Shown here in pieces: positions 43,318 through 61,028 of a stretch of 64,000 nucleotides of DNA. The translations under genes and the position numbers were made by a program. This stretch comes from Hormiphora californensis (Eukaryota > Animalia > Ctenophora). The notes under the pieces are model-generated. The model worked only from the letters and a program-made list of their open reading frames with translations. It had not been told where the DNA came from and searched no databases. How positions within the stretch are numbered: position 1 is the first letter of the stretch; every line of letters begins with the position of its first letter. The stretch spans positions 434,001 to 498,000 of the forward strand of contig CM035352.1 in NCBI GenBank assembly GCA_020137815.1, written 5' to 3'.

Positions 43318-46300
43318 TCAAGCCTTGCCTTCGCTCATGACAGTAACTGAGCATAGGCTCAGTGGTGCCCCGGTAGTGAGGGTAACTCCAACGCGGCCAC
43401 CAGTTGGTTTTCTTGGTAACGGAATGTGATACCACCACTTCGCTGAAATAATGTGCGGTTAGACTATAGAGGGGGGAGTGTCTTAACCCTGTCATAGTTT
43501 TATGATGATATATTTGATATCGCACTGCATTATTATAGATCAATTAGGGAGGATTTACATTTTGCCAAATTGCCAAACGTCGCTTTGCCGTTATACGCAT
43601 TTTTATATATGTAATATGTTATATTTAAATGCCCTTTGAAGCCAATTCAAAAGAGCATTTCAAATTACTAAGGTGTACGGCCTGGAACTGTTTGTTCCGC
43701 TAAATACACCACCAAACCCAATAGTGCACCTTTTAATTTTATTTTTGATTACTTTTGTGTCATGAATAGACTAGACGGCAAAGGGTTAGCTGCCGTCTTG
43801 CCAGACCCCGTTTGATTCTCATCGGGTCGGCGCTGCCAGGTAGTTGATTAAATCTGATTTACCCCATGACAGTTATCTACTCAATATCAGATGTAGGTCA
43901 TAGTAAAATTTAGAAGTTAAAGACTGGGTAAGGGTTTAAGTGAACTTGTTACATGTCTCGCCAACAGAATACCAATATAAATTCTGCACTTCCCCTAACC
44001 AAAAGTCTTAGCCTTGAGACCTTGAAGTGGGGTTAAACTTATTACATGTCTCGCCAAGTAAATACTGATCCTGCACAACCTTATACCTCAACAACATTTC
44101 CATGCGCAGTTTAATAGGATTTAATAGATTCGATAATAGACAGGGGTGACACGAAACACTTTGTAACATGTAACACGCACAAAAAGTTTTCTGCACATGT
44201 TACAAAGTGTTACAAAATGTTACATATTTTATATGACTTAAAACCGGTCCGTACACCCGATTTTGAGCTGATATGTTGTATAAAACACCATGAAACAGTG
44301 TCTTAGGTTCAGCCAAATACAAATATGTAAAGTATATTTCAGTATTTGACGTTGGAAAAGTATGTTTTTGTAACACTTTGTAACAATTTGTAACCACGTC
44401 TACTCATTTGTCCAGCCGGAAGGAGAAAACAAAACTTCCTCACTGATATGCGGCTAATAAACAATCAACCGATCCTTATTCTCAATTTGAAACACTATGT
44501 AACACTTATAAGTGTTACATAGTGTTACCTGTAACGTGCACAAAATTTAATTGCTAATCTGAACAAGATTGTCTGCGTTATTTTCTAACCTAACGTTCGC
44601 GTTGAATTTTCCTGCTGCGAAGCTGTGAAAAAAAGGAAATAATGGAATAATTGATAAGCTACTTACTTGGTTCATATTTAATTGTGTACACATGTTCTTG
44701 ATCAACAAACACGTTCGCTCCATCGATTCTTTCTGCACATTCCCTCCTGTCACATAAATGAATATTCAAAAATCATCTGAATATATTCAGGTTGATAAAG
44801 GTGTATGAACTGAATGGTCTAGATTAATGAAGATACAATTCAGATACTACTCTAGTTATTCTACCCTCCCATACAGTGAATTGAGCAATCACTGGTGAGA
44901 TTCAAATCAATCCTCAGTGAGTGTGACAATTGGCAATGTCTGGGTATTCAATGCATCTTGACAGCATATTATCACTGCGCTGGCAAGCGCAAAGGTGGCC
45001 CCATCCAACCCCCCGAAAAAAATTCCCCCAAAAAACGGCCCGCTTGCTCACAGCGTATATATAGTTATTTCATACTTTTAGCCCATTTTGGCACTTTTTG
45101 AGTGGCCATAACTCCCGAACCGGATGAGCTAGGAAGCTGAAATTTTGTACTCAGAAGCTTCTTGTAGACATCTATCGATGGTAAAAATTTCAAGTGGCTA
45201 GCTCTTTTTGTTCAAAAGTTATAACACCACCCCCAAAACAGAAAATTCAGTGTGGGGATAACTAGGTTGATACATATATACATACATAGATACATGTATA
45301 GACGCTTTGTTACCTTCCGTTTGGTCCCAGTTTGAGACGAACCAGACATCGTACGACCTTAAACCAAGCGGCAATCGACAGATAATTGTCTCGTGCATGT
45401 ACCCATTCTGGTGACGACTCTTCATCTTGCCTATGACACGCGCAATGACGTCACGAGTGATGTCATTGCGCGAGACCGACTAACTTTTTTCAAACGTCTC
45501 TAGCACCCTTGAGACGTGTTCCGATTTTTGATTTGACAAAAAATCGTTACCGGCAAATCGTCTGAACTTTCAGATACTATATAGCGAATTTTCGTAGCTC
45601 ATCATTTTGAGCCCTTAAATTGCGTCGGAAGTCAAAAATTTGACGAAAAATTCAGCAAATTGAACGTTTTTCTAGCAAAAGCTCCCTTTCCTGACCACTG
45701 CGGTCAATGATACTTTACAAGCTCCTTCAGGGTATTCATTCAAAATATATTGTGATGCAATTACGTCGTTACGACGTCACTAATTACGTCAGATGATGTC
45801 ATAATGACGTCAAAATTACGATTTTCACAGAAATTCGTCTCGTTTCTCATATAACACATCATTTTGACAATTTTACATCATGAAATAATGTCATACTGAC
45901 ATTAGAAACCAAAAAGGGACCTAAATTAAGCCAAAAACTAATTGGAATTAGTTGGCGGGAAAGGTGGCCCACTTACACCTTTGCCTGATGCCGGGTTTTA
46001 TTTTAAAATGTATCAGGGATATAAGAGGTGAGTGAAATAGAGAAAGAGAAAGAAAGGGTGAGAGAGAGAGATTGAGATACCGACGTGACGTGAAGAGAAT
46101 GACAGTTCGTGGTACCCGGTAGCAGCGAAAGGTGTAAGTGGGCCACCTTTCCCGCCAACTAATTCCAATTAGTTTTTGGCTTAATTATATATATTATTAT
46201 ATATTATATGCTGTGTTACTTGTGTGATGGTTTCGCAAGCTGCAATGTACCACTCTTTCCAAGGTACAGCTGAATTTGGATGTATTAATGTAGGAAAGTA

Positions 46301-49300
46301 GCTTATGATTGTAAACTTATTTAGAAACTTGACACCGCACGTTAAATTGTCACAACTTTATATCGCTTACATATATATTTTAATACTAGTCTTTTGTGCG
46401 TATTTTACGTCCAAACAGAGCGCCACACATAACGCGTTGAGATAACTCAGCATTAAGTTGGCTATAATAAAACCCCTCTCCGCTTATACCCTTAGAATAT
46501 GAATCGTTCGGACGGTTTAAAGTAAGACGGATACCTGTTTAGAATATTTATCTCGTTGATGATATGCCTTCCTTGAAGATCAACGAACCACCATGCGTTT
46601 TTATTATCCTTTTTGTTATCAGTGTGGGTCGTATTACCACTAGGCGGGAAGTGATTAGTATTAACTACTATTAATTAGCATTAATTATAAACTATGTACT
46701 TATTATAAAATGTAAATAAGAGTCATGCGTGTCAAGGCTCTATCGCTCCTGAGTCCAAACTAAAGTGCCTCAAGCAATTAGGAATCTTTTTAACGATCAA
46801 GATTTTTTAATTAACCATTTTAGTATTATTTTCAAAATTCCTAATTTCCATACCTGTCATATGTGTTGTTTTCATTTCCATTCACAGCTCTGTTGGGGTC
46901 ACCACCACATGCTATAGAAGACTGTTGACACGGCTTCTTGTGGGCTATTTCTGTCAGTGCGGGTCCTGATTTATAAAATGTATATTAATTATAGATAAAT
47001 ATTAAGATAACATTAATATTAATTAGGGGATTGGGGTAGGGCTTAATATTAATTGCATTATGTATCCATGTGCCGTGTTTCCTTGCCTTCATCTTCAGAG
47101 GTTCATGTGATCTGATCACTTTTAATGAGAATTGAGAATACTGTCACCTTACACAAGAACAGATGAGTTGTATTATGATCTTTCATTTATCGCTCTATAA
47201 AACTAGGCAGTGAAAGATTACATGTAGCAGGAGGGCGCCATGACGTTCTAAGTGATTAAGTTCAACCAACCCCAACCACACCATGTACCAACCCCAGCAG
47301 TCTGGCACCATGGTTTTCTGCATTGGCATACCAACAAGTATTGTTTTCATTTCATTTCTAAAATCATCAATATTTGCTTAGGAACGGGGCGCTTAGGAAG
47401 GGAGAAGAGAGGGCCGGAATCAACTTAGGGTTGTAAAATATGGACAGGGGTACTGCAGTACTAAAACATATACACTTTCTTTTGTTTATCGGGGGTGTAG
47501 TTCACTATTATTAGTCACCTCGTGTTGCAATTACTTCGTAGATAAACTATTGAAGCTGTTTCTATGTTAGATTACTTTCGTTCAACAAGTTATGGTGGTC
47601 TTTGAAATCATTTCAAGTACTATGATCTAAAACTCGAACAGTTGCACAATTCCGATTAATTATGTCATCACTTTTTAAAAGCAGTGGGTTCTATATTTCT
47701 TCCGAGAAAAAGAAAAGTGATCACAGTGCACTGTGATCATTTCTCTTCATAGCAAGTAACGTTTATATACTGTCGGAGCTTTTCATTGCTGATTGCGTGC
47801 TATTGGCTCGTTTTACTTATACTACCTCCTCTAAATGATTCGGTACCGAGCCCTTTTAACCATCTCTAGAAGCAGTATGTGGTTGTAGCTATTTATAATT
47901 CATTGATATCATTATATGTTTCTCTTTTTATTTTCATAATTCATCCACCTTCGATATTCAATTATTTTTCCTATATAATGGCTCCTAGAAACGTGCGATA
48001 TTGAGACTGTGCTAATACCTGTTTCCCCGGTACCAAAGACTTCAACTTGAGCAAGTGAGAGAGGTGCACCTGTCACCAAAGCCACTGTTATCGACTTAGA
48101 ACAGTAGTTGCCGGCGTCAAACTCGTACATCTGTTTTCCACCTGAGGAAATATTTTACATAATTTACAGCGGGATCCTAATTCCTAAATAGACTAAAATA
48201 TACTAAAATAGACTAAAATTTCACTCAGAGTAAAATATTTTTTAGGTAAATATTTCAGGCTTGGACTAATAATTGCCAAGCTAGACTGCCTTTCGCACGC
48301 AAATGTAAAGGGAGGGTTAAAACATAACAAACTAATAACACATGTCCAAAAAATAGGGAGTCTCGACTGAGAGACAGACGTGAGAAAGTGGGAGGATTGG
48401 TGGTAGTGGGGTGTAGTGCAGTATAGTGGGGCAATCTAATCGCACTAAATTCACTGCGACACTGCAATGTACTATTGAGTGTCCAGTGGTACACTGGCCA
48501 CTACCCACCCCATTCTCCTTATGCCTTCTTTGGGTGTACGGGAATCTGTCGTTTGATACTGTATCAACTACTTATTGCGTTAAATTTGATAATCTATAGT
48601 TATCACATGTCCACATGAACACCAAAAGTGAGATCGTACGTCAACGACAATATGACACACACACACACACACTGAAGTTCGAATCTTGAACCATAATGAC
48701 CTGATTGATTAGCCAAAATTGCCAAAAACTGTGAAATTGATCCATTAGGCAGTTAAGTTTGGATATTGGGTGAAGGAAACGATTTCAACTTCGGTGTGTC
48801 TCCCCTCATAGTGTGACAGTTTCTGCCCCCTGGTAACAAATATAACACAGCGAGGAATGTGTCTTTTGAGAGCACGAAAAAGGGAAAATACTCAGAAAGT
48901 TATGCTCTTCTACCTTAATCAAGCTTGTCCAATTCAATTTTTGTCCACTCTCACTTTAAATTTTATATAAATCTTGCAGTAGTATGACCCGTACCTAAAT
49001 CTCAAGGTGGCTAAAATCGCTCCGCATCTTTTTTTACTCTACCTCTACCAATCTGGCAATCTAAGGGGAAGGGTTACTTTAAATTTCGTATAACTCGCAA
49101 GGTGGCTCTGCCTATCCCAATCTAAGGGGAAGGATGTCAGCCTAGAATATAAATACACATTACTCTAGAAATCTCTCAAAGGACTTTAAAATCAAGGCGT
49201 GGTGGTTATGAACGTCGGCCCCCGTAAATTGTTATTTTATATGGGCAGCTTGATCTTATCATCCTTCCAAGCCAATCAAATGCTACAGCAATGATTGCTA

Positions 49301-52300
49301 TCAATTTTCACTGCCTGTCGAAAGCTGTCCAGGACAGCCTGTCCTGTATTTCTGATAACTAGTAACAAAAACCAATCAAATTGGTTTTGATAACTCGGGG
49401 CCTAAAGGCGTCCGGATGTGACCTTTAGTAGGTTTACCAGCTACAATAGTCTTGACGCCTTTTTGGACTCTCCTGTACAACTTACAAGTGATCCTTTTTA
49501 TTACCAACATGAGAGACAACAGTCTCTCCTCTAACGTATAGCAGCCTCTGATTCATTAATTAAAATACTGATCTCAGATGATATGATTTTCACTTACGTT
49601 GGTAGCGGATGTTGCCTAGTTTGTTCTTGTTTAGCATTACAGCCGCCCAATCGATCCTCTCAGCACACTCCTCTCTGTTCCAAACCCGGACCGTTTTGAT
49701 CTTGTACCACGCGCCCAGTTCGCAATGCCACCATGCAACACCGCCGTGCTTTGCCTTGTCTTCACCGGGTTTAGTGTGGGTAACTCCGTGACTGAAAAAT
49801 TAAAATGAGCTCTGTAGAATTGTAGACATCGCTTTCATATTTCGATATTAACGACTTATAAGTATGTACATATTATACTTATTTTGGGGGGGGGTTCAAC
49901 CCTAAAAATTTCCATTGATACCCACTTTTTTGGCAAATGGAAATTTTATTTTGGAAATTTTTAGAAATTTTTAGAAATTTTTGGAAATTTTTGGAAATTT
50001 TTAGAATTTTTTGGAAATTTTTAGAAATTTTTAGAAATTTTTAGAAATTTATGGACAATGGAAATTTTTGGAAGTTTTTAGTAAATGGAAATTTTTAGAA
50101 ATTTTTAGAAATTTTTAGAAGTTTTTAGAAGTTTTTAGAAACTTTTAGAAGTTTATATAAGTTCGTCGGTAACCCAATTCCAAGGTAATGACATGTAATC
50201 TATGCATGTTTTCGACAGTAAGTTAGTACTTATTCTCGCTATATCCCTTATCGAGTTTAAAAAAGAGTTTAAGTTTCTATATTGTATGCTAAGAAACCTG
50301 ATCTACTACGGTATTAAGCATTAGTCATGGTAAAAGGACCCGTCCGAAGGAATATTTAAAAGTAAGTTACCAAATAGCACCTTATATAAGTACATAAGGT
50401 ATCTTGTGCTATTTGGTAACTTACTTTTAAATCAGTTTTCGAGACGTCCGCGTCCTTAGTTGTCCAATGAAGCTATGATTTCTGAAGAAATTGTACGGAT
50501 TGCCCAAAAATATATGATATCGATGTCTTATCTATCATTCAATAACTTATTGATGCTCAGTTGTCACAAGAGGTAAGGAAAAGGAACCAGTTCTTCGACA
50601 ACTGTGTTTATATATTTTCAAGTTTTTGTTAATTTTTCTTTTCTTGGTCAATGGAAATTTTTGGAAATTTTTAGAAATTTTTAGAAATTTTTGGAAATTA
50701 ATGGAAATTTTTGGAAATTTTTAGAAATTTTTGGAAATTTTTAGTACTAAAAACTTCTAAAAATTTCTAAAAACTTCTAAAAATTTCTAAAAATTTCTAA
50801 AAATTTCTAAAAATTTCCATCGATACCCGGATTTTGGCAAATGGAAATGGAAATTTTTAGGTTGAACCCCCCCCCTATTTTATCGAAAAATGAAAGCTTT
50901 TAACATATATTTAGTGCACTCAACTGCAACACGGTCAGTATTATAATGGAAGAAACAGTATATATATTACTGTTTCTTCCATTAAATACCGGCTATAATA
51001 TAGGTGAATAATATTATATGGTGAGCACGTGATACTATGACCATTTATGGATTACTACTAAATTAGCACATACTACGTGATACATCACTTGGTTAATTTA
51101 TGTAGTTACTTTGCAAGTCGGAGATTTGCATACGCTGTAAGAGCACCATAATGATATAGGGACACATAATTAACATACTGCGTTATCACTGGTTATGGTA
51201 TGGTATGACACACCGTGACCCCCATAATTCGTAAATCACGTCCTGTGTGTTGCGCGACTGTGTGAAAATAGTGAGTTTTTTCGCCATAACCTAACCTAAC
51301 CATGACCTAACCTAACCACGACCTAACTTTTTATAAGAAGATAGATAAATCTATTCGATTTCGGATTTTCTTCCTTCAGACTTCCTACCAATGGCAGAGA
51401 TCACGTCCGGGCCGGAGAGGGGGGGGGGTAGAGAGATAGAGATAAGTTAAAGAGGAGAAAGAGACATATATCAGAGAAGGTTAGAGGACAATGAAAAAAT
51501 CCGGAAACGGCAATGGCGACAGTTTCAAAACAGAAGGGGTTTTTGGCAAAATTATAACAAAAAGGTACTTACTGGTCATACACTCCATCAGTATTGCCAT
51601 CCACTGCTCTTTCAGGTTTTCCTCCGCATGCAACAGAAGACTGATAAGTGGGCTTCCTTAAGGCCAGATTTTTTAGTCCCTGAACTGTAAAAACACGGAT
51701 TATTATATAATATCACATTGATGTCACGCCGTCACGGAGGGGGGATCAAATGTTAAATAACACTGTTCACAGCAACGGGAACCATGTGTGTTTAGGTCCA
51801 TGTGCATTGTGCATACTCTTCCAGACTATGATGACAAGTCAACATTTTATTGGGGACTCCTATTCCCTAATTTGGCCAAATTTAGTGGATATTAAGCATT
51901 TCTTTTTTGCTGCCACGCGATTGCCTGATTGAATGGACAAAGTGCGTTGCCCCCTGATTTGAAACTCTTTGTCAATATTTTAAAATGCGTGGTTTTAAAA
52001 TCTTATGAGTTGTACTTATCTTATCATTGACAGCTTTTATCTTCCCACGCCATGATTGAGACATTTTCGTTTAACTATCGCTATCATTTACTGCGTGTTC
52101 TCACTCCCTGACACTAAATCTAGCGAGCAATGAACGGCACTTCCGATGCATCTACCAATAGATTCCGACACGTTGTGGAAGGGTTTTCTGAAAAGGTCGT
52201 CTTCTATTCCTGGGCAGACAAGCTGATTGCAGTCATGCTATCTGGTTGCTTAGCTGCGGGAACTCCTCTCAACTTCCTGTCTCTGGTCTACTTTGGTCGG

Positions 52301-55300
52301 TGCAGGACAAAGGAGTGGTGGGTGCTAAATCGACTCTACACGCTGATATCACTCACTGATGCCGCTACCTGCCTCTCTATTACCCCCGTCCTTCTCTCGC
52401 TAATTAGCGACAGGGAGCCCATGCTGTTTGAATATCCGTGGGTGTGTCAGGTTTGGGAGCTTGCATACAACTTCCTCCCCTCATTCTCCATCTTCCTTGT
52501 AGCCACCCTCGCCATTTCCCGATCATTGCGAATCATCCGGCCCTACGAAAGTGTATCCATCAATGCGGTGATAATTTCCGTTGTTGCATACACAGCTTTC
52601 CTGTTTACAGTTACCGCCCTCAACTACGTTTTTGAAAGCCGGTATTATGTCTTGGAAATCGGATTCTGCATTGGCGTTGCAGGGAAAAGTATGGAACACG
52701 CTCACTTTAAGAACTTTGCTGTTATGGCACAAATTGGAGTCCCTTCAATCATTGTGTTCGTGTGTTTCATCATGTCTCTTCATCGAGTTCGACTCCTCAA
52801 TTCCAACTCGTTACGCTCCCGGAACATCAAATACCGAGTATCTCTGACCATCACCCTCTTCACCGGTATCTTCCTGGTCTGCAACACGCCTCTCTTCCTT
52901 AACACCACCATCCTATTGGTGGCACAGTGGATCACTGGGAAGTTCCCTGCTAAAATCTACGGGAGCCCCTTCATGGCTAGCTACAGTTGGCTCTTAGCCA
53001 AGATCCTGTTCCCCGCCCTCAACAGTGTCCTCAACCCCATTCTATACATAGCCCGGATAACCGATTTTGGGCAGTGGATCCGGGGGAAGAAAGAAACTAG
53101 CTCGACGAAACGTGAAGAGTCTGTTAAACTCTCGGGACAGGAGTGAGTGAAGGTTGAGGTATTTGAACTGAAAGGTTGAGTTGGTATTTGAACTGGAACA
53201 AGAGTTGTTGGCTGGACTACTTTTCTGAAGAGTTGGGGACAGTTTAAAATATCCGTTTTGAACTTAAGATGGGAAACATTAGGAAGTCAGAGTGGGCTGA
53301 GCTGGTATTGCTAAGTTATGTATTCAGAGGACAGAATCGAGTATACGACCCATACGAAGGACACGAGAGGAATAGTTCTAATTATCAGATGATATGATTG
53401 TCGGCTGTAAGTGTTTTCATTATGCTGCCCCAAATACAGAGATTGTAAAACTTATGCTGCAACTGTCTATATAGTTTGTTAAAAAGTTTAAAAAAACTAA
53501 ACTTTGTGTTTTACCTGAGCCACCGCTTCCTTTAGTTGAAGGTTGAGTTGAAGAGCTCTCAATGGTGACAAACTCCCAGGCACTTGCTTTGTCCCGATTC
53601 ACCTGCCAACTTCCATTTGGTTGGGCGGACAAGTATTTTTTATGAAAGGACTTGATCATTTTCTTACCGCCCTGATTTGGGACGTCCTGTAAGGTGAAGT
53701 GCTCCCAGCCCAGTGCTTTGTCTCTATTCCACTGGAGAGTCCCGTTTGCCTGGGCTGAAATATTCGATTTAGAATTCAAAAGAATACATAAAAATACATG
53801 ACAAAAAGTAAAATGGAAAAGTAAAATTTAATTCTTGCTCTGAACTCATTATTCAAAAAGTAAAATATGAGTACTCTACAAGGATTAACGGTATTTAAAA
53901 CTGCACACCTACCTGAGAGATATTTGCCGGCTGATGATCTGAAAGCCACTACACCATCTTTAATCTTCACCATGAAATATTCACTATTGTCATGCTCTGA
54001 TGGCTTCAAGTAGTGCCCATGGTGACCTTTGATCTTGATACCTATAACAGTGAGAATGACGTGTTGTATCTCTTTCACAACGATACTTCAAAGTTCAACC
54101 CACTTCATTGTTTTATAATTTATAGCGAGGTAAATCTAGGTTAGTGATTTAACTCTCGTGAATGAGAAAAGGCACATACCTCCTGCTGGAGCAGCGGCAG
54201 GGGGAGGGGCCGGGGCAGCCGCAGGAGGAGGGGCTGGAGCTGGAGCTGGTTTGGGTTTGGAAACAGGTTTCTTTGCAGATTTAAATCCACCACTCACATC
54301 TAAAAAGTTGTTTCTTTGAGAGTGATTTTAAAAGGAAGGGAGTTATGCAATCTCTATCGAGGTATGGCAGGTTGTAGAACTATATATCTCATGAGATATT
54401 GAGATAGGTATTTAATATGATTGTAAGCTCCTATATCCTAAATCATACTTATATGGTTGGATTTTGCAAAGATGGTTAGGGATTACGTTTAGATGTTTAT
54501 GGATTTCGACTAATCGCTCATACCAAGATTAAGTTTGTTAGCAATTTCGAGAAGAAGGGCATCGCCTTTTTTAGCGATCTCATCTCCTTCAGCTCCCCTA
54601 AAATCCAGCCATAGTTTTCCAGCAGTTATGACACCTAACCACCCGCTCGCCCGGTACTCAGATCCATTTTCCATTCGCTGTTGAACCATCACAGGTACAA
54701 TCTGAGGGAAAACGATGGCCATGGTAGTCATAATATGATATCGTATATAGTAGAGAGTTCAGAGTTGCATGTAAATTTAAGAAATGGTGGTTATAGGATT
54801 TTTAAAACTAGTAAACCCGTTCGCCCTACGGGCGAATTTCGGGGAAATGGTATTGGTAGCTGGAATAGGGAACACTGACATCATCAGTCTAACTAATGAC
54901 ATGCACTATCCCATCTTAAGTAACGGTACCTTAGAAGGAGCTCAGGCGGGATCGCTGCGAGTTTCTGGTTTCAGAACGTCAAATGATGATCCGGCGATCA
55001 AAGTTATAAAAGAACTTACTATTTCGTCTGCTTGCAGTATTCATCTGCCTTAATCTCTGAGATTGATCATCGGTTCTGTTTAACCTCTAACGTCTTGTTC
55101 GTTCTCTCTGCACTTCTTTTGGTGATGCTGCATTTGAACCCCTCAGTGTATGGAAAAGTAGAGAATAGCGGTGAGATCTTGCGTGAATAACTCCAATTGT
55201 CGCTGTCGTATATCAAGAGTTGTTGAAGAGAGCATATAATTAGCTGGAACAGTGAAACAGACTAAAGCAAGATCAAATGCACGTGCACGTGCAGTATAAC

Positions 55301-56727
55301 AGTAGCAACCATGCCATTGGCAACGGCTCCGACTCCTGGCCCCACTCCAATAGTACTCCACAGTTCACCTCTAGGCTCTAAACCTGCACGTGCTAAATGC
55401 CATATAAGGTAAAAAACGTTACACTGGATTTCCCTATTTGCTTTAATAATAGTATGATTTGGATAATTGGTTCGAGAATAACTAATATAATTTGAGTCAT
55501 AATACCTGGACTCTTCGATCTTTAGCGTAGTTCAATTCCAGCTCACACGCTTCTGAGGATTGATAAGCCTCTGTCATAAAGGGGCAAATCACCATCGCAT
55601 TTTCGACGCCTTTTGCCATTGCAGCGTTGATATTCCCTGTGGGAGGTTTCAGGTTATTAAATTTTACAAACCGAAAGTTCGGTTTGTCCACCGAGGACAA
55701 CTGTATAACTACAAAATTGCACAGTTGATTTTCTAGAATCAGATTAGCCACACTCCACAGTATGTTGCTAAGCAGTTATATACCAAAACTCTACCCCCTC
55801 CCCCCTCCCCCCGCACGGAAACTCTACCTCTCACCTGTTACTCCACCCTTTACGTCCATCCAAACGGGAAGACCTTTACTCTCAATGTACTCATACACAG
55901 CAATAACCAGTTCCTGGACTCCCCAATTGTAAGACAACATGATATGGCTCTCCCCCAGCTGAAAATAGTCATGTCTGTGATATGAAATGTGTCACATGAA
56001 CTATAAACTATTTAGTATTTACTAGTAAACCCGTTCGCCCTACGGGCGAATTTCGGGGAAATGGTATTGGTAGCTGGAATAGGGAACACTGACATCATCA
56101 GTCTAACTAATGACATGCACTATCCCATCTTAAGTAACGGTACCTTAGAAGGAGCTCAGGCGGGATCGCTGCGAGTTTCTGGTTTCAGAACGTCAAATGA
56201 TGATCCGGCGATCAAAGTTATAAAAGAACTTACTATTTCGTCTGCTTGCAGTATTCATCTGCCTTAATCTCTGAGATTGATCATCGGTTCTGTTTAACCT
56301 CTAACGTCTTGTTCGTTCTCTCTGCACTTCTTTTGGTGATGCTGCATTTGAACCCCTCAGTGTATGGAAAAGTAGAGAATAGCGGTGAGATCTTGCGTGA
56401 ATAACTCCAATTGTCGCTGTCGTATATCAAGAGTTGTTGAAGAGAGCATATAATTAGCTGGAACAGTGAAACAGACTAAAGCAAGATCAAATGCACGTGC
56501 ACGTGCAGTATAACAGTAGCAACCATGCCATTGGCAACGGCTCCGACTCCTGGCCCCACTCCAATAGTACTCCACAGTTCACCTCTAGGCTCTAAACCTG
56601 CACGTGCTAAATGCCATATAAGGTAAAAAACGTTACACTGGATTTCCCTATTTGCTTTAATAATAGTATGATATAGTTTACAAGTATGGTGAAATAGAAT
56701 CTTACCTTCTCTCGTAGAGTTTGACAT
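43318..56727 (-). CDS. cytosolic TIR (TIR_2 type) + Pro/Ala linker + fascin-like beta-trefoil + F-type lectin domain + degenerate second F-type lectin domain (11 exons)
   Basis: Exons 56727-56706, 55958-55835 (HIMLSYNW..VWMDV), 55636-55506 (AMAKGVENA..YQSSEACELELNYA), 54701-54524 (IVPVM..GWLG..WLDF), 54299-54180, 54041-53913, 53754-53515 (KYLSAQ.NG....NRDKA..WE x2), 51684-51573 (NLALRKPTYQSS..RAVDGN), 49791-49598 (THT..AWW..LG..VWNREECAER), 48141-48019 (LSLAQVEVFG), 46965-46854 and 43442-43318. Intron phases are consistent after removing one homopolymer base at ~55953 and one at ~46870. Confidence 0.82.
44968..46187 (-). mobile_element. Helentron-associated (HINE-like) element, uninterrupted copy
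   Basis: Reverse copy of 10411-13371 lacking the 1.56-kb insert; same subTIRs and terminal hairpin. Confidence 0.78.
49886..50875. mobile_element. foldback-type element with 10-bp subrepeats
   Basis: G9-TTCAACC...GGTTGAA-C9 termini, TATTTT on both flanks, arrays of TTTTT(A/G)GAAA, internal hairpin at 50353-50432. Confidence 0.75.
52130..53146 (+). CDS. rhodopsin-class GPCR, intronless, nested antisense in an intron of the TIR-lectin gene
   Basis: Seven hydrophobic segments; GTPLN (TM1), SLTD (TM2), C at the TM3 start, LAISR..I..P (DRY equivalent), CNTP (TM6), LNSVLNPILY (NPxxY). Confidence 0.92.
   Translation: MNGTSDASTNRFRHVVEGFSEKVVFYSWADKLIAVMLSGCLAAGTPLNFLSLVYFGRCRTKEWWVLNRLYTLISLTDAATCLSITPVLLSLISDREPMLFEYPWVCQVWELAYNFLPSFSIFLVATLAISRSLRIIRPYESVSINAVIISVVAYTAFLFTVTALNYVFESRYYVLEIGFCIGVAGKSMEHAHFKNFAVMAQIGVPSIIVFVCFIMSLHRVRLLNSNSLRSRNIKYRVSLTITLFTGIFLVCNTPLFLNTTILLVAQWITGKFPAKIYGSPFMASYSWLLAKILFPALNSVLNPILYIARITDFGQWIRGKKETSSTKREESVKLSGQE
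54808..55457 (-). mobile_element. 650-bp non-autonomous Helitron, copy 1
   Basis: A|TC...hairpin TTCGCCC-GTA-GGGCGAA...CTAG|T, no TSD; lies in TIR gene intron 3. Confidence 0.92.
56022..56671 (-). mobile_element. 650-bp non-autonomous Helitron, copy 2
   Basis: Appears identical to copy 1; lies in TIR gene intron 1. Confidence 0.92.
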
Positions 56728-57086
56728 ATCTCAGGGGTGAAACTCATTGGTGCAACCAAAATACCTGTCCGAAGTAAAACAGTCACGATCAGACGGGTTA
56801 ACCAATGGTCGATTAAAACAGTTCAGCGCCTATCCCCCGGTTATTCTAACTATGTTCTGGCTGAAAAAAGCAAGATCTCGGACAAATACTACAACAAACA
56901 GTATGTAATAACACGTGAGTAGGTTAGATGAAAGATCTCAAACAGTAAACATAAAAACTGAAGGAAATCGTTACGTAATACGTAGGCCGAGGCGTAGGCG
57001 TACTACGCAAGCAGACATTTTAACAAGGACCCCATGTGTGAAGTAGACCACTTTTGTATTGTTTCGGTAACGTGCGAATAACAAGC

Positions 57087-57167
<81 letters not shown>

Positions 57168-57179
57168 TAGAGAGAGAGA

Positions 57180-57230
<51 letters not shown>

Positions 57231-57615: not shown

Positions 57616-57703
<88 letters not shown>

Positions 57704-58566
57704 CTCTCCATCTCTAACTGGACGTCCATTATAACCACAGCTACATTGCTCTCCCTATACGCTCCATTATAATGGACATTTGCGGATCTATTATCTCTCC
57801 CGTGTTGCAGTATAGTGCTTGTAGTGGAGATACGGTAATGGCGGATACCGTTAGAAGATCACTGTAAAGTACTACTACAGCTCCACCAGCCAACTGGCAA
57901 CACCTAGATACACAAAACAAGGGGAAAGGGATGGTAGATCGGCAAGTCTTCAGTCTTTATGCGTGTACGTGGCCTAATGAGCCCACCCTCCCTCTCTCTC
58001 TTCCACACACTCCGTTGGATACCATGACAACAGTCACGCAAGCTCACAAAGCAGACTATCACTCGCATCTTAGAGGTTATAATGTCAACAAACATCCTTC
58101 TTCCATGATACACTGAGACTGCTAAATGTTTTACTAAGCTCGGTTCCATGGTCCGATGAAAAAATGTGAGCGCACAAAAATTGGTCTCTTTCTGCACATC
58201 ACAACTATAATAACTATGAAGTATGAAGACTATGATGCTATTTCAGTGTGCCGCACAGACTGATCAAATCAGTGTGATCGTGATGAGATATCTTTTAGAC
58301 TTTTGTATCTGATATTGGATTTACACCATGATCATAGTAATATACCCTTTTTCACTAGATTGTATACAAGACCCTGTACCACATGTACCACCATCATTAT
58401 CATCACTGTTTATACTAGCTGTACTGGTCTTTGCTATTCAAGATTTTTCTTAAAGCAAAAGGATTTCGACCATTAACGACAATGTAACATCTCTAATGTA
58501 ATGCAATCGACCACAAACATAACGTTAGGATCCTTTTACCATCTAGACACCAAAAATAAGCAACAA

Positions 58567-59305: not shown

Positions 59306-60362
59306 AGATATGACACATCTCATTATTATAATATGGAGCTATCAGCTTAAGTAGGTTGTATTTAAGAAATTTTCAAGTTCTAGAATACTTTTGGACCTGT
59401 AAAGATTAACAAAACAGATCTGGACAAAGACGATTCGAAATATGTATCGCTGCCGCTTGTAGTCGCATTACCGTAATGGAATTATAGTAATGAGACGCAG
59501 ACTTTGCATAACGCACGGCAAAAAGTGCATTTGTCAGCACGTACTAGCGCACTGATTGGCCACGGTTGCGTGTCTTTATACCGTCCCACTACAAGCGACC
59601 GGGTATGATAGGAATTTAAATACACGTTTCACAAATAAAATATGCTTTCAAGGGTATCTACAGAGGAAAAGTGTTTATTTGACCAGCAGCCTGACTGATT
59701 GGTGCCCCGCTCTGTGCTCTACTGCCTGCTACAACACCCGATCGACCCGGAACTCCCAGTCTCGCGTCCTCAGACGGGATACCCATTGTCCGAAAGTGGG
59801 TCACAACATTGGTCATGACTTTTGTGACTTCTGATTTCAAAGTGTTCCCGCTGGAAAGTTGGATGAGAGGGTTAGCAAAACTGTTGAGATATGCACAGAA
59901 GTTGTATGCAGCATAGAAGTAGGTCTGTTCGATGCCGGCCTGCAAATGGTAAATTGGTATTGGATAAAGTAGTATTAATTTAAAAAAATCCCCCAGAGAT
60001 TACCATTACCATTTGAGATATGAGGGCGTTAAGGTTGCTGTTGATCTTCACGTTCATAATCAGGTTCTTGAAGTTATGAAAGATAATGAGGGAGAAGCAG
60101 ATGAAATACCAACCAGTCATCAACATCAGGGATATCACCTACAAGACGTTAACTATTTAGTTATTGGAAACACAATCAATACATTTGATCACCAATGAGG
60201 ACTCGATCCGGGGATTTGTTTGAATTAAGAAAACATACCACTTTTTTGCTAAGAATCTGGGATTTAGGATGACTGCCCTTCTGCTTAATCCACGTTTTCT
60301 GAAACATGTCAATTTTGCCACTAAATTAAGCTAATTAATCTTTCTGAGAATTCGTCTCTGAA

Positions 60363-61012
60363 TCATACTATTATTAAAGCAAATAGGGAAATCCAGTGTA
60401 ACGTTTTTTACCTTATATGGCATTTAGCACGTGCAGGTTTAGAGCCTAGAGGTGAACTGTGGAGTACTATTGGAGTGGGGCCAGGAGTCGGAGCCGTTGC
60501 CAATGGCATGGTTGCTACTGTTATACTGCACGTGCACGTGCATTTGATCTTGCTTTAGTCTGTTTCACTGTTCCAGCTAATTATATGCTCTCTTCAACAA
60601 CTCTTGATATACGACAGCGACAATTGGAGTTATTCACGCAAGATCTCACCGCTATTCTCTACTTTTCCATACACTGAGGGGTTCAAATGCAGCATCACCA
60701 AAAGAAGTGCAGAGAGAACGAACAAGACGTTAGAGGTTAAACAGAACCGATGATCAATCTCAGAGATTAAGGCAGATGAATACTGCAAGCAGACGAAATA
60801 GTAAGTTCTTTTATAACTTTGATCGCCGGATCATCATTTGACGTTCTGAAACCAGAAACTCGCAGCGATCCCGCCTGAGCTCCTTCTAAGGTACCGTTAC
60901 TTAAGATGGGATTGTGCATGTCATTAGTTAGACTGATGATGTCAGTGTTCCCTATTCCAGCTACCAATACCATTTCCCCGAAATTCGCCCGTAGGGCGAA
61001 CGGGTTTACTAG
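60363..61012 (+). mobile_element. 650-bp non-autonomous Helitron, copy 3
   Basis: A|TC at 60363 and CTAG|T at 61012; near-identical to copies 1 and 2 (one visible substitution). Confidence 0.92.
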
Positions 61013-61028
61013 TATTACTAAGTTATGC

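What the first reader, a model, noticed from the sequence alone, without database searches (positions are those of the whole stretch)
43318..56727. TIR + fascin-like beta-trefoil + F-type lectin protein: candidate cytosolic glycan-sensing NADase
Seen: phase-consistent exons join an N-terminal TIR_2-type domain (SY.W, VWMD, S..CELEL.YA, retaining the Glu at the position catalytic in SARM1 and in plant and bacterial TIR NADases), a Pro/Ala spacer, a fascin-type trefoil (KYLSAQ.NG...NR...WE repeats) and a fucolectin/FTP domain. The lectin keeps AVDGN and the His/Arg/Arg triad (THT-x-NREECAER, with a longer loop and loss of the vicinal CC). There is no signal peptide or TM. Established: F-type lectins are normally extracellular fucose binders, and enzymatic TIRs are activated by clustering. 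Inference: multivalent glycans (cytosolic microbes or ruptured vacuoles) could cluster the TIR, with the trefoil binding actin or glycan. I do not know this architecture from any described receptor, and the ORF track shows it only as unconnected fragments.
Basis: partly seen in the sequence, partly recalled or inferred. Interest (0 to 1): 0.85.

Follow-up and report, generated by a model that had tools for sequence, protein, structure and literature searches.

The report
Comb-jelly TIR protein fused to lectins
This is one real 14-exon gene of a comb jelly that joins an immune-type TIR signalling domain to three sugar-binding domains with no secretion signal; it is conserved in two other comb jellies but has never been studied, so it is a good candidate for an intracellular sugar sensor in animals that lack Toll-like receptors.

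Summary
On the minus strand, 14 GT-AG exons (56747 to 43318) with matching phases and no internal stop give a 604-codon reading frame. The order is a short N-terminal helix, a TIR_2 domain, a Pro/Ala linker, one beta-trefoil and two F-type lectin domains.

All 14 exons map in order onto annotated but uncharacterised proteins of Mnemiopsis leidyi (633 aa) and Bolinopsis microptera. So it is one gene, despite a 1.8-kb intron that holds an antisense 7TM receptor ORF.

- The start codon is at 56747, not 56727.
- There are two FTP domains, not one.
- The trefoil carries the Trp-Glu sugar-site motif of bacterial CBM92 modules, and so probably binds glycan, not actin.

New context: the only close TIR paralogue in this genome is fused to galectin repeats, and that fusion is also conserved in Bolinopsis. 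This makes a small ctenophore family of TIR-lectin proteins.

The TIR glutamate, the lectin His/Arg/Arg triads and two trefoil Trp-Glu sites are conserved. There is no signal peptide or membrane segment.

NADase activity, sugar binding and activation by clustering remain inference. No RNA data could be laid on the window. Plants have an analogous TIR-lectin class (PP2-A5). I found no description of one in animals.

The parts
56706..56747 (-). Exon 1: start codon at 56747 and 14 codons (MSFTPEICQTLREK); phase-0 donor
   Evidence: Sequence read; phase check; aligns to residues 1-14 of P0161 and P0162; forms an N-terminal helix in the orthologue model
56021..56672 (.). 653-bp transposable-element copy inside intron 1
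   Evidence: Identical repeat pair; at least 40 near-identical copies genome-wide, 489 first-look candidates
55835..55958 (-). Exon 2: TIR part 1 (beta-A MLSYNW ... VWMD..GGVT)
   Evidence: TIR_2 profile positions 1-33; 71-76% identical to the orthologues
55506..55636 (-). Exon 3: TIR part 2 with FMTEAYQSSEACELELNYA; the second Glu of CELEL is the conserved alpha-C glutamate
   Evidence: TIR_2 profile positions 35-77; 81-84% identical to the orthologues; Glu invariant in all ten relatives
54807..55470 (.). Second copy of the 653-bp transposable element, inside intron 3
54524..54701 (-). Exon 4: TIR part 3 (IVPVMVQ ... SGWLGVITAGKLW ...)
   Evidence: 66-70% identical to the orthologues; 51% to the TIR-galectin proteins
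54180..54299 (-). Exon 5: Lys/Pro/Ala-rich linker; symmetric phase 1-1
   Evidence: low-confidence disordered segment in the orthologue model
53913..54041 (-). Exon 6: beta-trefoil lobe alpha (no Trp-Glu motif) and the start of lobe beta
   Evidence: Weak Fascin and FRG1 hits; maps to P0161 residues 221-273
53515..53754 (-). Exon 7: beta-trefoil lobes beta and gamma with GWEHF and AWEFV
   Evidence: CBM92 structures 7zoi/7zoh at E 3e-3 with the Trp-Glu positions aligned; motif table; 529 relatives in the protein library
52130..53146 (+). Nested antisense 338-aa ORF with seven hydrophobic segments and an NPxxY-like motif (7TM receptor), inside intron 7; not part of the TIR-lectin protein
   Evidence: no Pfam match; nested intronic genes are common in this species (PMC8527503)
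51573..51684 (-). Exon 8: FTP domain 1, part a (LKNLALRKP ... AVDGN); no in-frame ATG
   Evidence: 77-83% identical to the orthologues
49598..49791 (-). Exon 9: FTP domain 1, part b (THT ... WW ... NREECAER; His/Arg/Arg triad)
   Evidence: F5_F8_type_C_2; FBP32 3cqo at E 1.2e-4 and AAA 1k12 aligned
48019..48141 (-). Exon 10: FTP domain 1, part c (GAPLSLAQVEVFG)
46854..46965 (-). Exon 11: FTP domain 2, part a
46535..46639 (-). Exon 12: FTP domain 2, part b (TTHT ... WW ... ILN)
   Evidence: F5_F8_type_C_2 at E 6e-5
44667..44746 (-). Exon 13: FTP domain 2, part c (R|RECAER; the intron splits the Arg motif)
43318..43442 (-). Exon 14: FTP domain 2, part d, and the TGA stop

Best explanation
Shown: the stretch is a single protein-coding gene of a ctenophore. 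Genome size, scaffold number and GC content point to Hormiphora californensis.

The gene encodes about 604 residues in this order: an N-terminal helix, a TIR_2-class TIR domain, a Pro/Ala/Lys linker, one CBM92/fascin-like beta-trefoil, and two tandem F-type lectin domains. It has no signal peptide or membrane segment. The same architecture is kept in Mnemiopsis and Bolinopsis. A paralogue with the same three-exon TIR carries galectin repeats instead.

Inferred: the protein stays in the cytosol. Its four to five sugar sites (two His/Arg/Arg fucose-type sites and two Trp-Glu trefoil sites) bind multivalent glycans that do not normally face the cytosol. These would be the surfaces of invading microbes, or lumenal glycans exposed on ruptured phagosomes or endosomes. 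Binding crowds the N-terminal TIR domains together. The assembled TIRs then signal, most likely by cleaving NAD+ into ADP-ribose-type messengers through the conserved alpha-C glutamate.
For: Gene model:
- 13 GT-AG introns, consistent phases, no internal stop.
- Collinear, gap-free mapping of all exons on P0161 and P0162, which carry TIR_2 (58 and 53 bits, cut-off 28), Fascin/FRG1 and F5_F8_type_C_2 above cut-off in the same order.
- The FTP1a exon has no in-frame ATG, and no plausible start or signal-peptide exon lies between it and the trefoil exon.
- Nested intronic genes are frequent in H. californensis: 2357 of them (PMC8527503).

Cytosolic location: no hydrophobic N-terminus, and the maximum 19-residue hydropathy is 1.56 or less. 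The canonical vicinal Cys-Cys of secreted F-lectins is lost.

Binding residues conserved across the three species: the THT...WW...NR.EC.ER motif in both FTP domains, and WE.F in trefoil lobes beta and gamma. In CBM92 this Trp stacks on the sugar and the Glu hydrogen-bonds O3/O4 (PMC11039641).

Folds in the orthologue model:
- The TIR has pLDDT of about 90.
- The trefoil matches fascin at Z 20.3 and CBM92-B at Z 19.6.
- The FTP pair matches striped-bass FBP32 at Foldseek E 4.6e-15.

TIR: the glutamate is invariant in ten family members, including TIR-NB-ARC and SAM-TIR proteins. It lies in the predicted alpha-C helix.

Paralogue: TIR + Gal-bind_lectin is found in this genome, in Bolinopsis P0155, and on a cDNA-sized contig, P0156.

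Literature: many non-TLR animal TIRs with this glutamate make cADPR when expressed in E. coli (bioRxiv 10.64898/2026.04.20.719644).
Against: - No transcript evidence for this species. The one listed run held none of the exons.
- No enzymatic, binding or localisation data exist.
- The Trp found four residues before the catalytic Glu in SARM1 and plant TIRs (from my own knowledge) is Ala, Ser or Asn in this subfamily.
- Some TIRs keep the Glu without activity.
- No solved TIR matched by sequence, and the fold-search lists were filled by trefoil hits, so the TIR active site was never compared with a known NADase.
- One trefoil lobe has lost its Trp-Glu.
- F5/8-type-C-like folds can bind lipids, and fascin-like trefoils can bind actin.
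- Lectins without signal peptides, such as galectins, can still be exported.
Confidence: 0.45

Rival explanations
1. Same gene and same lectin targeting, but the TIR is a non-enzymatic scaffold. Glycan-driven clustering would recruit other TIR proteins by TIR-TIR contacts, as in the MyD88/TLR type.
For: The aromatic residue four positions before the Glu is missing. TLR2 and IL-1R9/10 keep the Glu without activity. The genome holds a few other TIR_2 loci that could be partners.
Against: Ctenophores lack TLR and MyD88-type partners according to PMC11797021. The Glu is invariant across distant members of the subfamily. Most tested non-TLR animal TIRs with the Glu were active.
Confidence: 0.25
2. 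The C-terminal domains bind something other than glycans, for example actin through the trefoil (as in fascin) or membrane lipid through the discoidin-like FTP fold. The protein would then be a cytoskeleton- or membrane-anchored TIR adaptor.
For: Fascin is the top structural match by a hair (Z 20.3 against 19.6). The Pfam Fascin and FRG1 models score above cut-off in the orthologues.
Against: There is a single trefoil, whereas fascin needs four. The CBM92 sugar-site Trp-Glu is kept in two lobes in all three species, and sequence identity is highest to CBM92 (23-29% against 16-21%). The fucose-binding His/Arg/Arg triad is kept in both FTP domains. The paralogue's partner is a galectin with the canonical H..R / N / W..E.R residues.
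Confidence: 0.12
3. The protein is exported by an unconventional route and acts as an extracellular agglutinin; the TIR would have another role there or none.
For: F-type lectins are normally extracellular. Galectins leave cells without a signal peptide (established knowledge).
Against: TIR domains act in the cytoplasm in all known systems. The disulfide pattern of secreted F-lectins is not kept. The TIR is the best-conserved part of the protein, at 66-84% identity.
Confidence: 0.05
4. There are two adjacent genes (TIR-trefoil and FTP-FTP), separated by the 7TM gene.
For: The 1.8-kb gap holds an opposite-strand ORF. After exon 7 the frame stays open for 30 more codons and could end there. No RNA evidence was available.
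Against: Orthologous proteins in two species run straight from the trefoil into FTP1, and the window's exons 7 and 8 abut at P0161 residues 351 and 354. The phase-1 donor meets a phase-1 acceptor. The FTP part has no start codon or leader exon.
Confidence: 0.03

Closest known systems
Arabidopsis TIR-lectin two-domain proteins (PP2-A5, PP2-A8; TIR + Nictaba/PP2 lectin)
   Same: An N-terminal TIR followed by a C-terminal lectin, with no signal peptide or TM, and a defence-related role. The TIR catalysis and sugar binding are also still uncharacterised (PMC10329053, PMC12355970).
   Different: The lectin fold is unrelated (Nictaba beta-sandwich against F-type lectin, beta-trefoil and galectin). 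The TIR belongs to the plant clade. This is an independent fusion, not homology of the whole protein.
F-type lectins: eel agglutinin AAA (1k12) and striped-bass tandem FBP32 (3cqo)
   Same: Sequence and fold homology, tandem arrangement, and the His/Arg/Arg fucose triad within the HT...WW...NR..C.ER motif.
   Different: No signal peptide, one Cys in place of the vicinal Cys-Cys, a longer loop between THT and WW, and fusion to a TIR.
CBM92 ('bacterial fascin-like domain'), CpCBM92A/B (7zoi, 7zoh)
   Same: A single beta-trefoil of about 125 residues with a WExF motif at the end of each lobe. Structural match Z 19.6, rmsd 1.7 A, 23-29% identity.
   Different: Only two of three lobes keep Trp-Glu. 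The host is an animal, whereas the CBM92 paper found the family almost only in bacteria. The module is not appended to a glycoside hydrolase. Its ligand is unknown.
Fascin (actin-bundling protein)
   Same: Beta-trefoil fold (Z 20.3). The Pfam Fascin model scores above cut-off in the orthologues.
   Different: One trefoil instead of four, 16-21% identity, and it carries the sugar-site Trp-Glu motif.
SARM1 and other TIR NADases (plant TIRs, bacterial ThsB, TIR-SAVED)
   Same: TIR_2-class domain with the conserved alpha-C glutamate. Weak PADLOC hits to ThsB and SAVED-TIR. A sensor module is fused to the TIR.
   Different: No ARM or SAM domains, the TIR is N-terminal, the Trp before the Glu is absent, and activity is untested.
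Cytosolic galectins as sensors of damaged vacuoles (galectin-3, -8; established knowledge)
   Same: Lectins without a signal peptide that would meet glycans only when a compartment breaks or a microbe enters. The paralogue of this gene is a TIR-galectin fusion.
   Different: Mammalian galectins recruit autophagy adaptors and carry no TIR. Here the lectin and the effector are one polypeptide.

Membership tests
TIR_2 (PF13676) TIR domain | Match to the family profile above the curated cut-off (28 bits) | tested here: inconclusive
Single exons score 19.5 and 24.7 bits on consecutive profile positions 1-33 and 35-77. The orthologues P0161 and P0162 score 58.2 and 52.6 bits, and the window exons are 66-84% identical to them.
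TIR_2 (PF13676) TIR domain | Flavodoxin-like alternating beta/alpha fold | tested here: met
   The AlphaFold model of orthologue P0161 gives residues 1-160 at pLDDT of about 90, with beta-A 19-23, alpha-A 26-41, alpha-B 58-67, beta-C 69-76 and alpha-C 84-95. This was tested on the orthologue, not on the window protein.
Enzymatic (NADase) TIRs | Conserved glutamate at the start of helix alpha-C | tested here: met
   The motif S..C..E[LA] is invariant in the window, the own-genome paralogue and eight relatives. The Glu lies in the predicted alpha-C. Its equivalence to SARM1 E642 or the plant catalytic Glu rests on motif knowledge, not on a computed alignment.
Enzymatic (NADase) TIRs | NAD+ cleavage that depends on that glutamate | not testable with these tools
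   This needs expression and LC-MS, as done in bioRxiv 10.64898/2026.04.20.719644.
F-type lectin (fucolectin, FTP) | Homology to solved F-type lectins | tested here: met
   Window exon 9 against FBP32 3cqo gives E 1.2e-4 and against AAA gives 0.07. Relative P0073 against 3cqo gives 2.4e-16 and against 2j1r gives 3e-12. The orthologue model against 3cqo gives Foldseek E 4.6e-15.
F-type lectin (fucolectin, FTP) | His/Arg/Arg sugar-binding triad | tested here: met
   THT ... NREECAER in FTP1 and TTHT ... NR|RECAER in FTP2, aligned to NRGDCCGER of AAA and FBP32. The triad is kept in P0161 and P0162.
F-type lectin (fucolectin, FTP) | Vicinal Cys-Cys and a secretory signal, as in the classical family | tested here: not met
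   There is a single Cys at that position. There is no hydrophobic N-terminus.
CBM92 / bacterial fascin-like domain | Beta-trefoil with a WExF motif in each of three lobes | tested here: inconclusive
   The fold is met (Z 19.6, TM 0.86-0.88). The motif is present in lobes beta and gamma (GWEHF, AWEFV) but lost in lobe alpha, and the same holds in both orthologues. Sequence E-values are 3e-3 for the window exon and 1.8e-13 for relative P0073.
Fascin (actin bundler) | Four tandem trefoils that form the actin-binding sites | tested here: not met
   Only one trefoil is present.
SARM1 family | ARM - SAM - SAM - TIR architecture | tested here: not met
   No ARM or SAM domain is present, and the TIR is N-terminal.

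The most novel reading that the evidence does not exclude
Ctenophores, which lack Toll-like receptors and MyD88, have a small family of one-polypeptide cytosolic glycan sensors: TIR-galectin and TIR-trefoil-F-lectin. In these, binding of foreign or wrongly exposed glycans directly switches on a catalytic TIR that makes NAD+-derived messengers. This would be an animal counterpart of plant TIR-lectins and a fusion of the 'galectin danger sensor' and 'TIR enzyme' principles.
Probability: 0.3. Interest if true: 0.8.

Novelty: new variant of a known kind. Interest (0 to 1): 0.62.

Why it matters
How the earliest-branching animals sense microbes is an open question. Published surveys find no canonical TLR or MyD88 in ctenophores and list only zinc-finger, EF-hand, lamin-tail, FN3 and death domains as TIR partners (PMC11797021).

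A conserved TIR fused directly to lectins, in two versions, gives a concrete and testable candidate receptor-effector. One recombinant protein can be assayed for sugar specificity and for Glu-dependent NAD+ processing.

It would also extend F-type lectins and CBM92-like trefoils to an intracellular role in animals. And it would show that TIR-lectin fusion arose independently in plants and animals.

Tried and rejected
- **RNA evidence:** the only listed run (X1) held none of the exons, and its single contig touched an intron repeat.
- **Metagenome scan with P0073:** found nothing.
- **Trefoil exon against 1.84 billion representatives:** 529 trefoil proteins. None of the top 150 had a TIR and only P0073 had an FTP domain. 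The orthologues surfaced only with a word-based search that used an alignment carrying the window's exons.
- **Sequence search of solved structures for the TIR:** nothing with exon 3, P0155 or P0159.
- **First AlphaFold run (TIR-galectin P0156, 12 rows):** the TIR came out at pLDDT below 50 and was unusable.
- **Fold searches of the 633-residue orthologue model:** the lists were filled by trefoil and FTP hits, so no TIR neighbour was obtained.
rejected on phase.
- **Tandem duplication as the cause of the 1214-nt repeat spacing:** rejected, because the repeat is a dispersed 653-bp element.
- **Independent start exon for the FTP half:** none found.
- **Supplement of PMC11797021:** the domain table for the TIR2 genes is cut in the stored copy, so I could not tell whether the Mnemiopsis orthologue is among its 15 TIR2 genes.
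- **Joined 604-residue model:** never searched or folded. The orthologues served as proxies.

Full report
**What organism**

The window is G000:C3:434001-498000 of a 110,691,255-base assembly in 45 records, and window GC is about 42%. Published figures for the cydippid ctenophore Hormiphora californensis are 110.6 Mb, 44 scaffolds, 43.1% GC and 13 chromosomes of 6.4-10.3 Mb (PMC8527503; PMC11797021 Table 1).

The best protein relatives are from Mnemiopsis and Bolinopsis. I take the species as very likely H. californensis. This is an inference.

**The observation**

Pfam on single exons gives TIR_2 positions 1-33 and 35-77 on successive exons, weak Fascin on two exons, and F5_F8_type_C_2 on two lectin exons. 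I read every junction from the sequence and then checked them by script without building the joined sequence.

The result is 14 exons and 13 GT-AG introns. All phases match, there are no internal stops, and the CDS is 1815 nt, which is 604 codons plus TGA at 43320-43318.

The linker exon and the two trefoil exons are phase 1-1, and each FTP exon set also starts and ends in phase 1. That is the pattern expected of shuffled domain exons.

The ATG at 56747 uses the same donor in phase 0 and gives MSFTPEICQTLREK.

**One gene or two**

The weak point of the model was the 1830-nt intron between trefoil exon 7 and FTP exon 8. It contains a 338-aa plus-strand ORF with seven hydrophobic segments and an NPxxY-like motif. 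Four results settle the matter.

1. The phase-1 donor at 53515 meets a phase-1 acceptor at 51684.
2. Exon 8 has no in-frame ATG, and no ATG-initiated mini-exon with a hydrophobic leader and a phase-1 donor lies in the gap.
3. Nested intronic genes are a known feature of this genome: 2357 of them, carrying 12% of exonic bases (PMC8527503).
4. The decisive result is a word-based search with an alignment carrying the window's exons. It found P0161 (633 aa, GenBank 'hypothetical protein ACHWQZ_G005866', Mnemiopsis leidyi) and P0162 (555 aa, RefSeq 'uncharacterized protein LOC134812224 isoform X3', Bolinopsis microptera).

Both proteins carry TIR_2, Fascin/FRG1 and F5_F8_type_C_2 above Pfam cut-offs in the same order. 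All 14 window exons map on P0161 in order and end to end. Exon 7 ends at residue 351 and exon 8 starts at 354, and exon 1 maps to residues 1-14. Identity is 66-84% in the TIR, 34-50% in the trefoil and 49-83% in the lectin exons.

The joined 604-residue model itself was not searched or folded. The orthologues stand in for it.

No RNA of this species could be laid. Expression here is therefore unproven.

**Introns and transposons**

The 100% identical repeat pair spaced 1214 nt apart is not a local duplication. It is a 653-bp dispersed element with at least 40 near-identical copies, out of 489 first-look candidates. One copy sits in intron 1 and one in intron 3. Without them these introns would be about 95 and 140 nt long.

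**The domains**

*TIR.* The three TIR exons are 51-72% identical to the TIR of TIR-galectin proteins and 34-58% identical to TIRs of TIR-NB-ARC and SAM-TIR proteins. The motif FM[ST]..Y..S..C..E[LA].[FY]A was found in nine of the ten sequences examined. The own-genome paralogue ends it in T instead of A but keeps the glutamate, so the glutamate is invariant in all ten.

In the AlphaFold model of P0161 (33-row alignment, TIR pLDDT about 90) this Glu lies in helix alpha-C, just after beta-C. That is where catalytic TIRs have it (motif knowledge).

The residue four positions before the Glu is Ala, Ser or Asn in this family. It is Trp in SARM1 and plant TIRs (my knowledge).

PADLOC gives only weak ThsB and SAVED-TIR hits, and no solved TIR matched by sequence. 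A 2026 preprint reports that many non-TLR animal TIRs with the Glu make cADPR. It also reports that TLR2 and IL-1R9/10 keep the Glu without activity. The Glu is therefore necessary but not sufficient.

*Trefoil.* The window exon hits CBM92 structures 7zoi and 7zoh (E 3e-3), with its two Trp-Glu pairs aligned to theirs, and does not hit fascin. Relative P0073 hits CBM92 at 1.8e-13 and fascin at 5e-8.

By structure, fascin (Z 20.3, 16% identity) and CBM92-B (Z 19.6, 23% identity) are tied. Foldseek gives TM 0.88 and 29% identity to CBM92-A.

CBM92 is the former 'bacterial fascin-like domain'. Each lobe ends in WExF, the Trp stacks on a glucosyl unit and the Glu binds O3/O4. It prefers beta-1,6- and beta-1,3-glucans, and it was reported almost only from bacteria (PMC11039641).

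In the window, lobes beta and gamma keep GWEHF and AWEFV and lobe alpha has lost the motif. The same two-of-three pattern holds in Mnemiopsis and Bolinopsis. A single trefoil cannot act like four-trefoil fascin.

*F-type lectins.* There are two domains, of 3 and 4 exons. Exon 9 aligns to FBP32 (E 1.2e-4) and to eel agglutinin, with NREEC-AER opposite NRGDCCGER. Both Arg residues and the His of THT are kept in both domains and in the orthologues. The vicinal Cys-Cys is reduced to one Cys, and the THT-to-WW loop is longer. The orthologue model's top Foldseek hit is the tandem F-lectin FBP32 (E 4.6e-15).

*Location.* The N-terminus is not hydrophobic, and the highest 19-residue hydropathy (1.56 or less) falls in a lectin core strand. 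So there is no signal peptide and no membrane segment.

**A family of TIR-lectin fusions**

The genome has few TIR_2 loci, about five. The only close paralogue of this TIR is at C5:1580283-1581136. It has the same three-exon structure. A 426-aa ORF that is Gal-bind_lectin (E 1.8e-22) follows it.

The fusion is real elsewhere. Bolinopsis LOC134821743 (P0155, 656 aa) and P0156 (654 aa, on a 2161-nt and so cDNA-sized contig) both carry TIR_2 and galectin repeats. The first galectin domain keeps the H..R / N / W..E.R sugar residues.

P0073, from a metagenome, has FTP-FTP-P/A-linker-trefoil in a different order. These modules therefore travel together.

**Mechanism**

Shown: the architecture, its conservation, the conserved candidate active-site and sugar-site residues, and the absence of targeting signals.

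Inferred: the protein is cytosolic. Its four to five sugar sites bind multivalent glycans that reach the cytosol only with microbes or after vesicle rupture. This concentrates the TIR, which then signals, most likely enzymatically. The galectin-bearing paralogue makes the glycan-sensor reading more coherent, because galectins are the classical cytosolic sensors of exposed lumenal glycans (established knowledge).

I give the whole chain about 0.45. Rivals are a scaffold-only TIR (0.25), non-glycan ligands (0.12), export (0.05) and two separate genes (0.03).

**Comparison and novelty**

The nearest described analogue is the plant TIR-lectin class (PP2-A5, PP2-A8). These have an N-terminal TIR and a cytoplasmic Nictaba-type lectin, no signal peptide, and a defence phenotype, and their biochemistry is still open (PMC10329053 and PMC12355970). 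Their lectin fold and TIR clade differ, so this is a parallel invention.

Within animals I found no description. Full-text searches for TIR with F-type lectin, fascin or galectin gave nothing relevant. The survey of ctenophore TIR2 proteins names only zinc-finger, EF-hand, lamin-tail, FN3 and death domains as partners.

The orthologues do exist in public databases as uncharacterised proteins. I class the finding as a new variant of a known kind (a TIR fused to a sensor module), with interest 0.62.

Noticed in passing
window 54807-55470, 56021-56672 and about 60361-61013 (G000:C3:494361-495013): A 653-bp non-coding dispersed element. It has at least 40 copies, most of them 99-100% identical, out of 489 first-look candidates, so it looks very recently active. 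Two copies sit in introns of the TIR-lectin gene.
   Followed up: partly
window 52130-53146 (+): An intronless 338-aa ORF with seven hydrophobic segments and an NPILY motif, probably a class-A-like 7TM receptor. It is nested antisense in intron 7 of the TIR-lectin gene. It has no Pfam match, and its exact sequence is not in the protein collection.
   Followed up: partly
G000:C5:1579700-1583200 (L011 from about 8800, L014 to 2150): A second TIR-lectin gene. It has a short first exon (MDFGTVLEALIDQ), the same three TIR exons, a Lys-rich linker, and a 426-aa exon of galectin repeats. Orthologues are P0155 (Bolinopsis), P0156 and P0153.
   Followed up: partly
P0073 (318 aa, JGI metagenome contig of 1351 nt): A relative with the modules in another order: end of FTP1, FTP2, P/A linker, then a trefoil with all three WE.F sites. 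It starts just after the position of the window's intron 9. What lies upstream is unknown.
   Followed up: partly
G000:C11:4587434-4590405; also C6:3886017, C1:7623934, C4:6713581, C8:2737285: A tandem array and scattered copies of the same CBM92-like trefoil in this genome. None of them has a TIR or FTP domain nearby within 20 kb on C11. The CBM92 paper reported the family in only one animal genome.
   Followed up: no
G000:C1:4042210-4057594: A cluster of at least nine FTP-like domains in large open frames, apparently a separate F-type lectin gene array.
   Followed up: no
P0162 (Bolinopsis isoform X3): This isoform ends in ...NILNRSMVV, exactly at the position of the window's intron 12 (inside the NR|RECAER motif). 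That suggests intron retention or an alternative 3' end that truncates FTP2.
   Followed up: no
window 57084-57227 and 57617-57715: Long (TC)n and (GA)n microsatellites form an inverted pair about 400-470 nt apart, just upstream of the gene.
   Followed up: no
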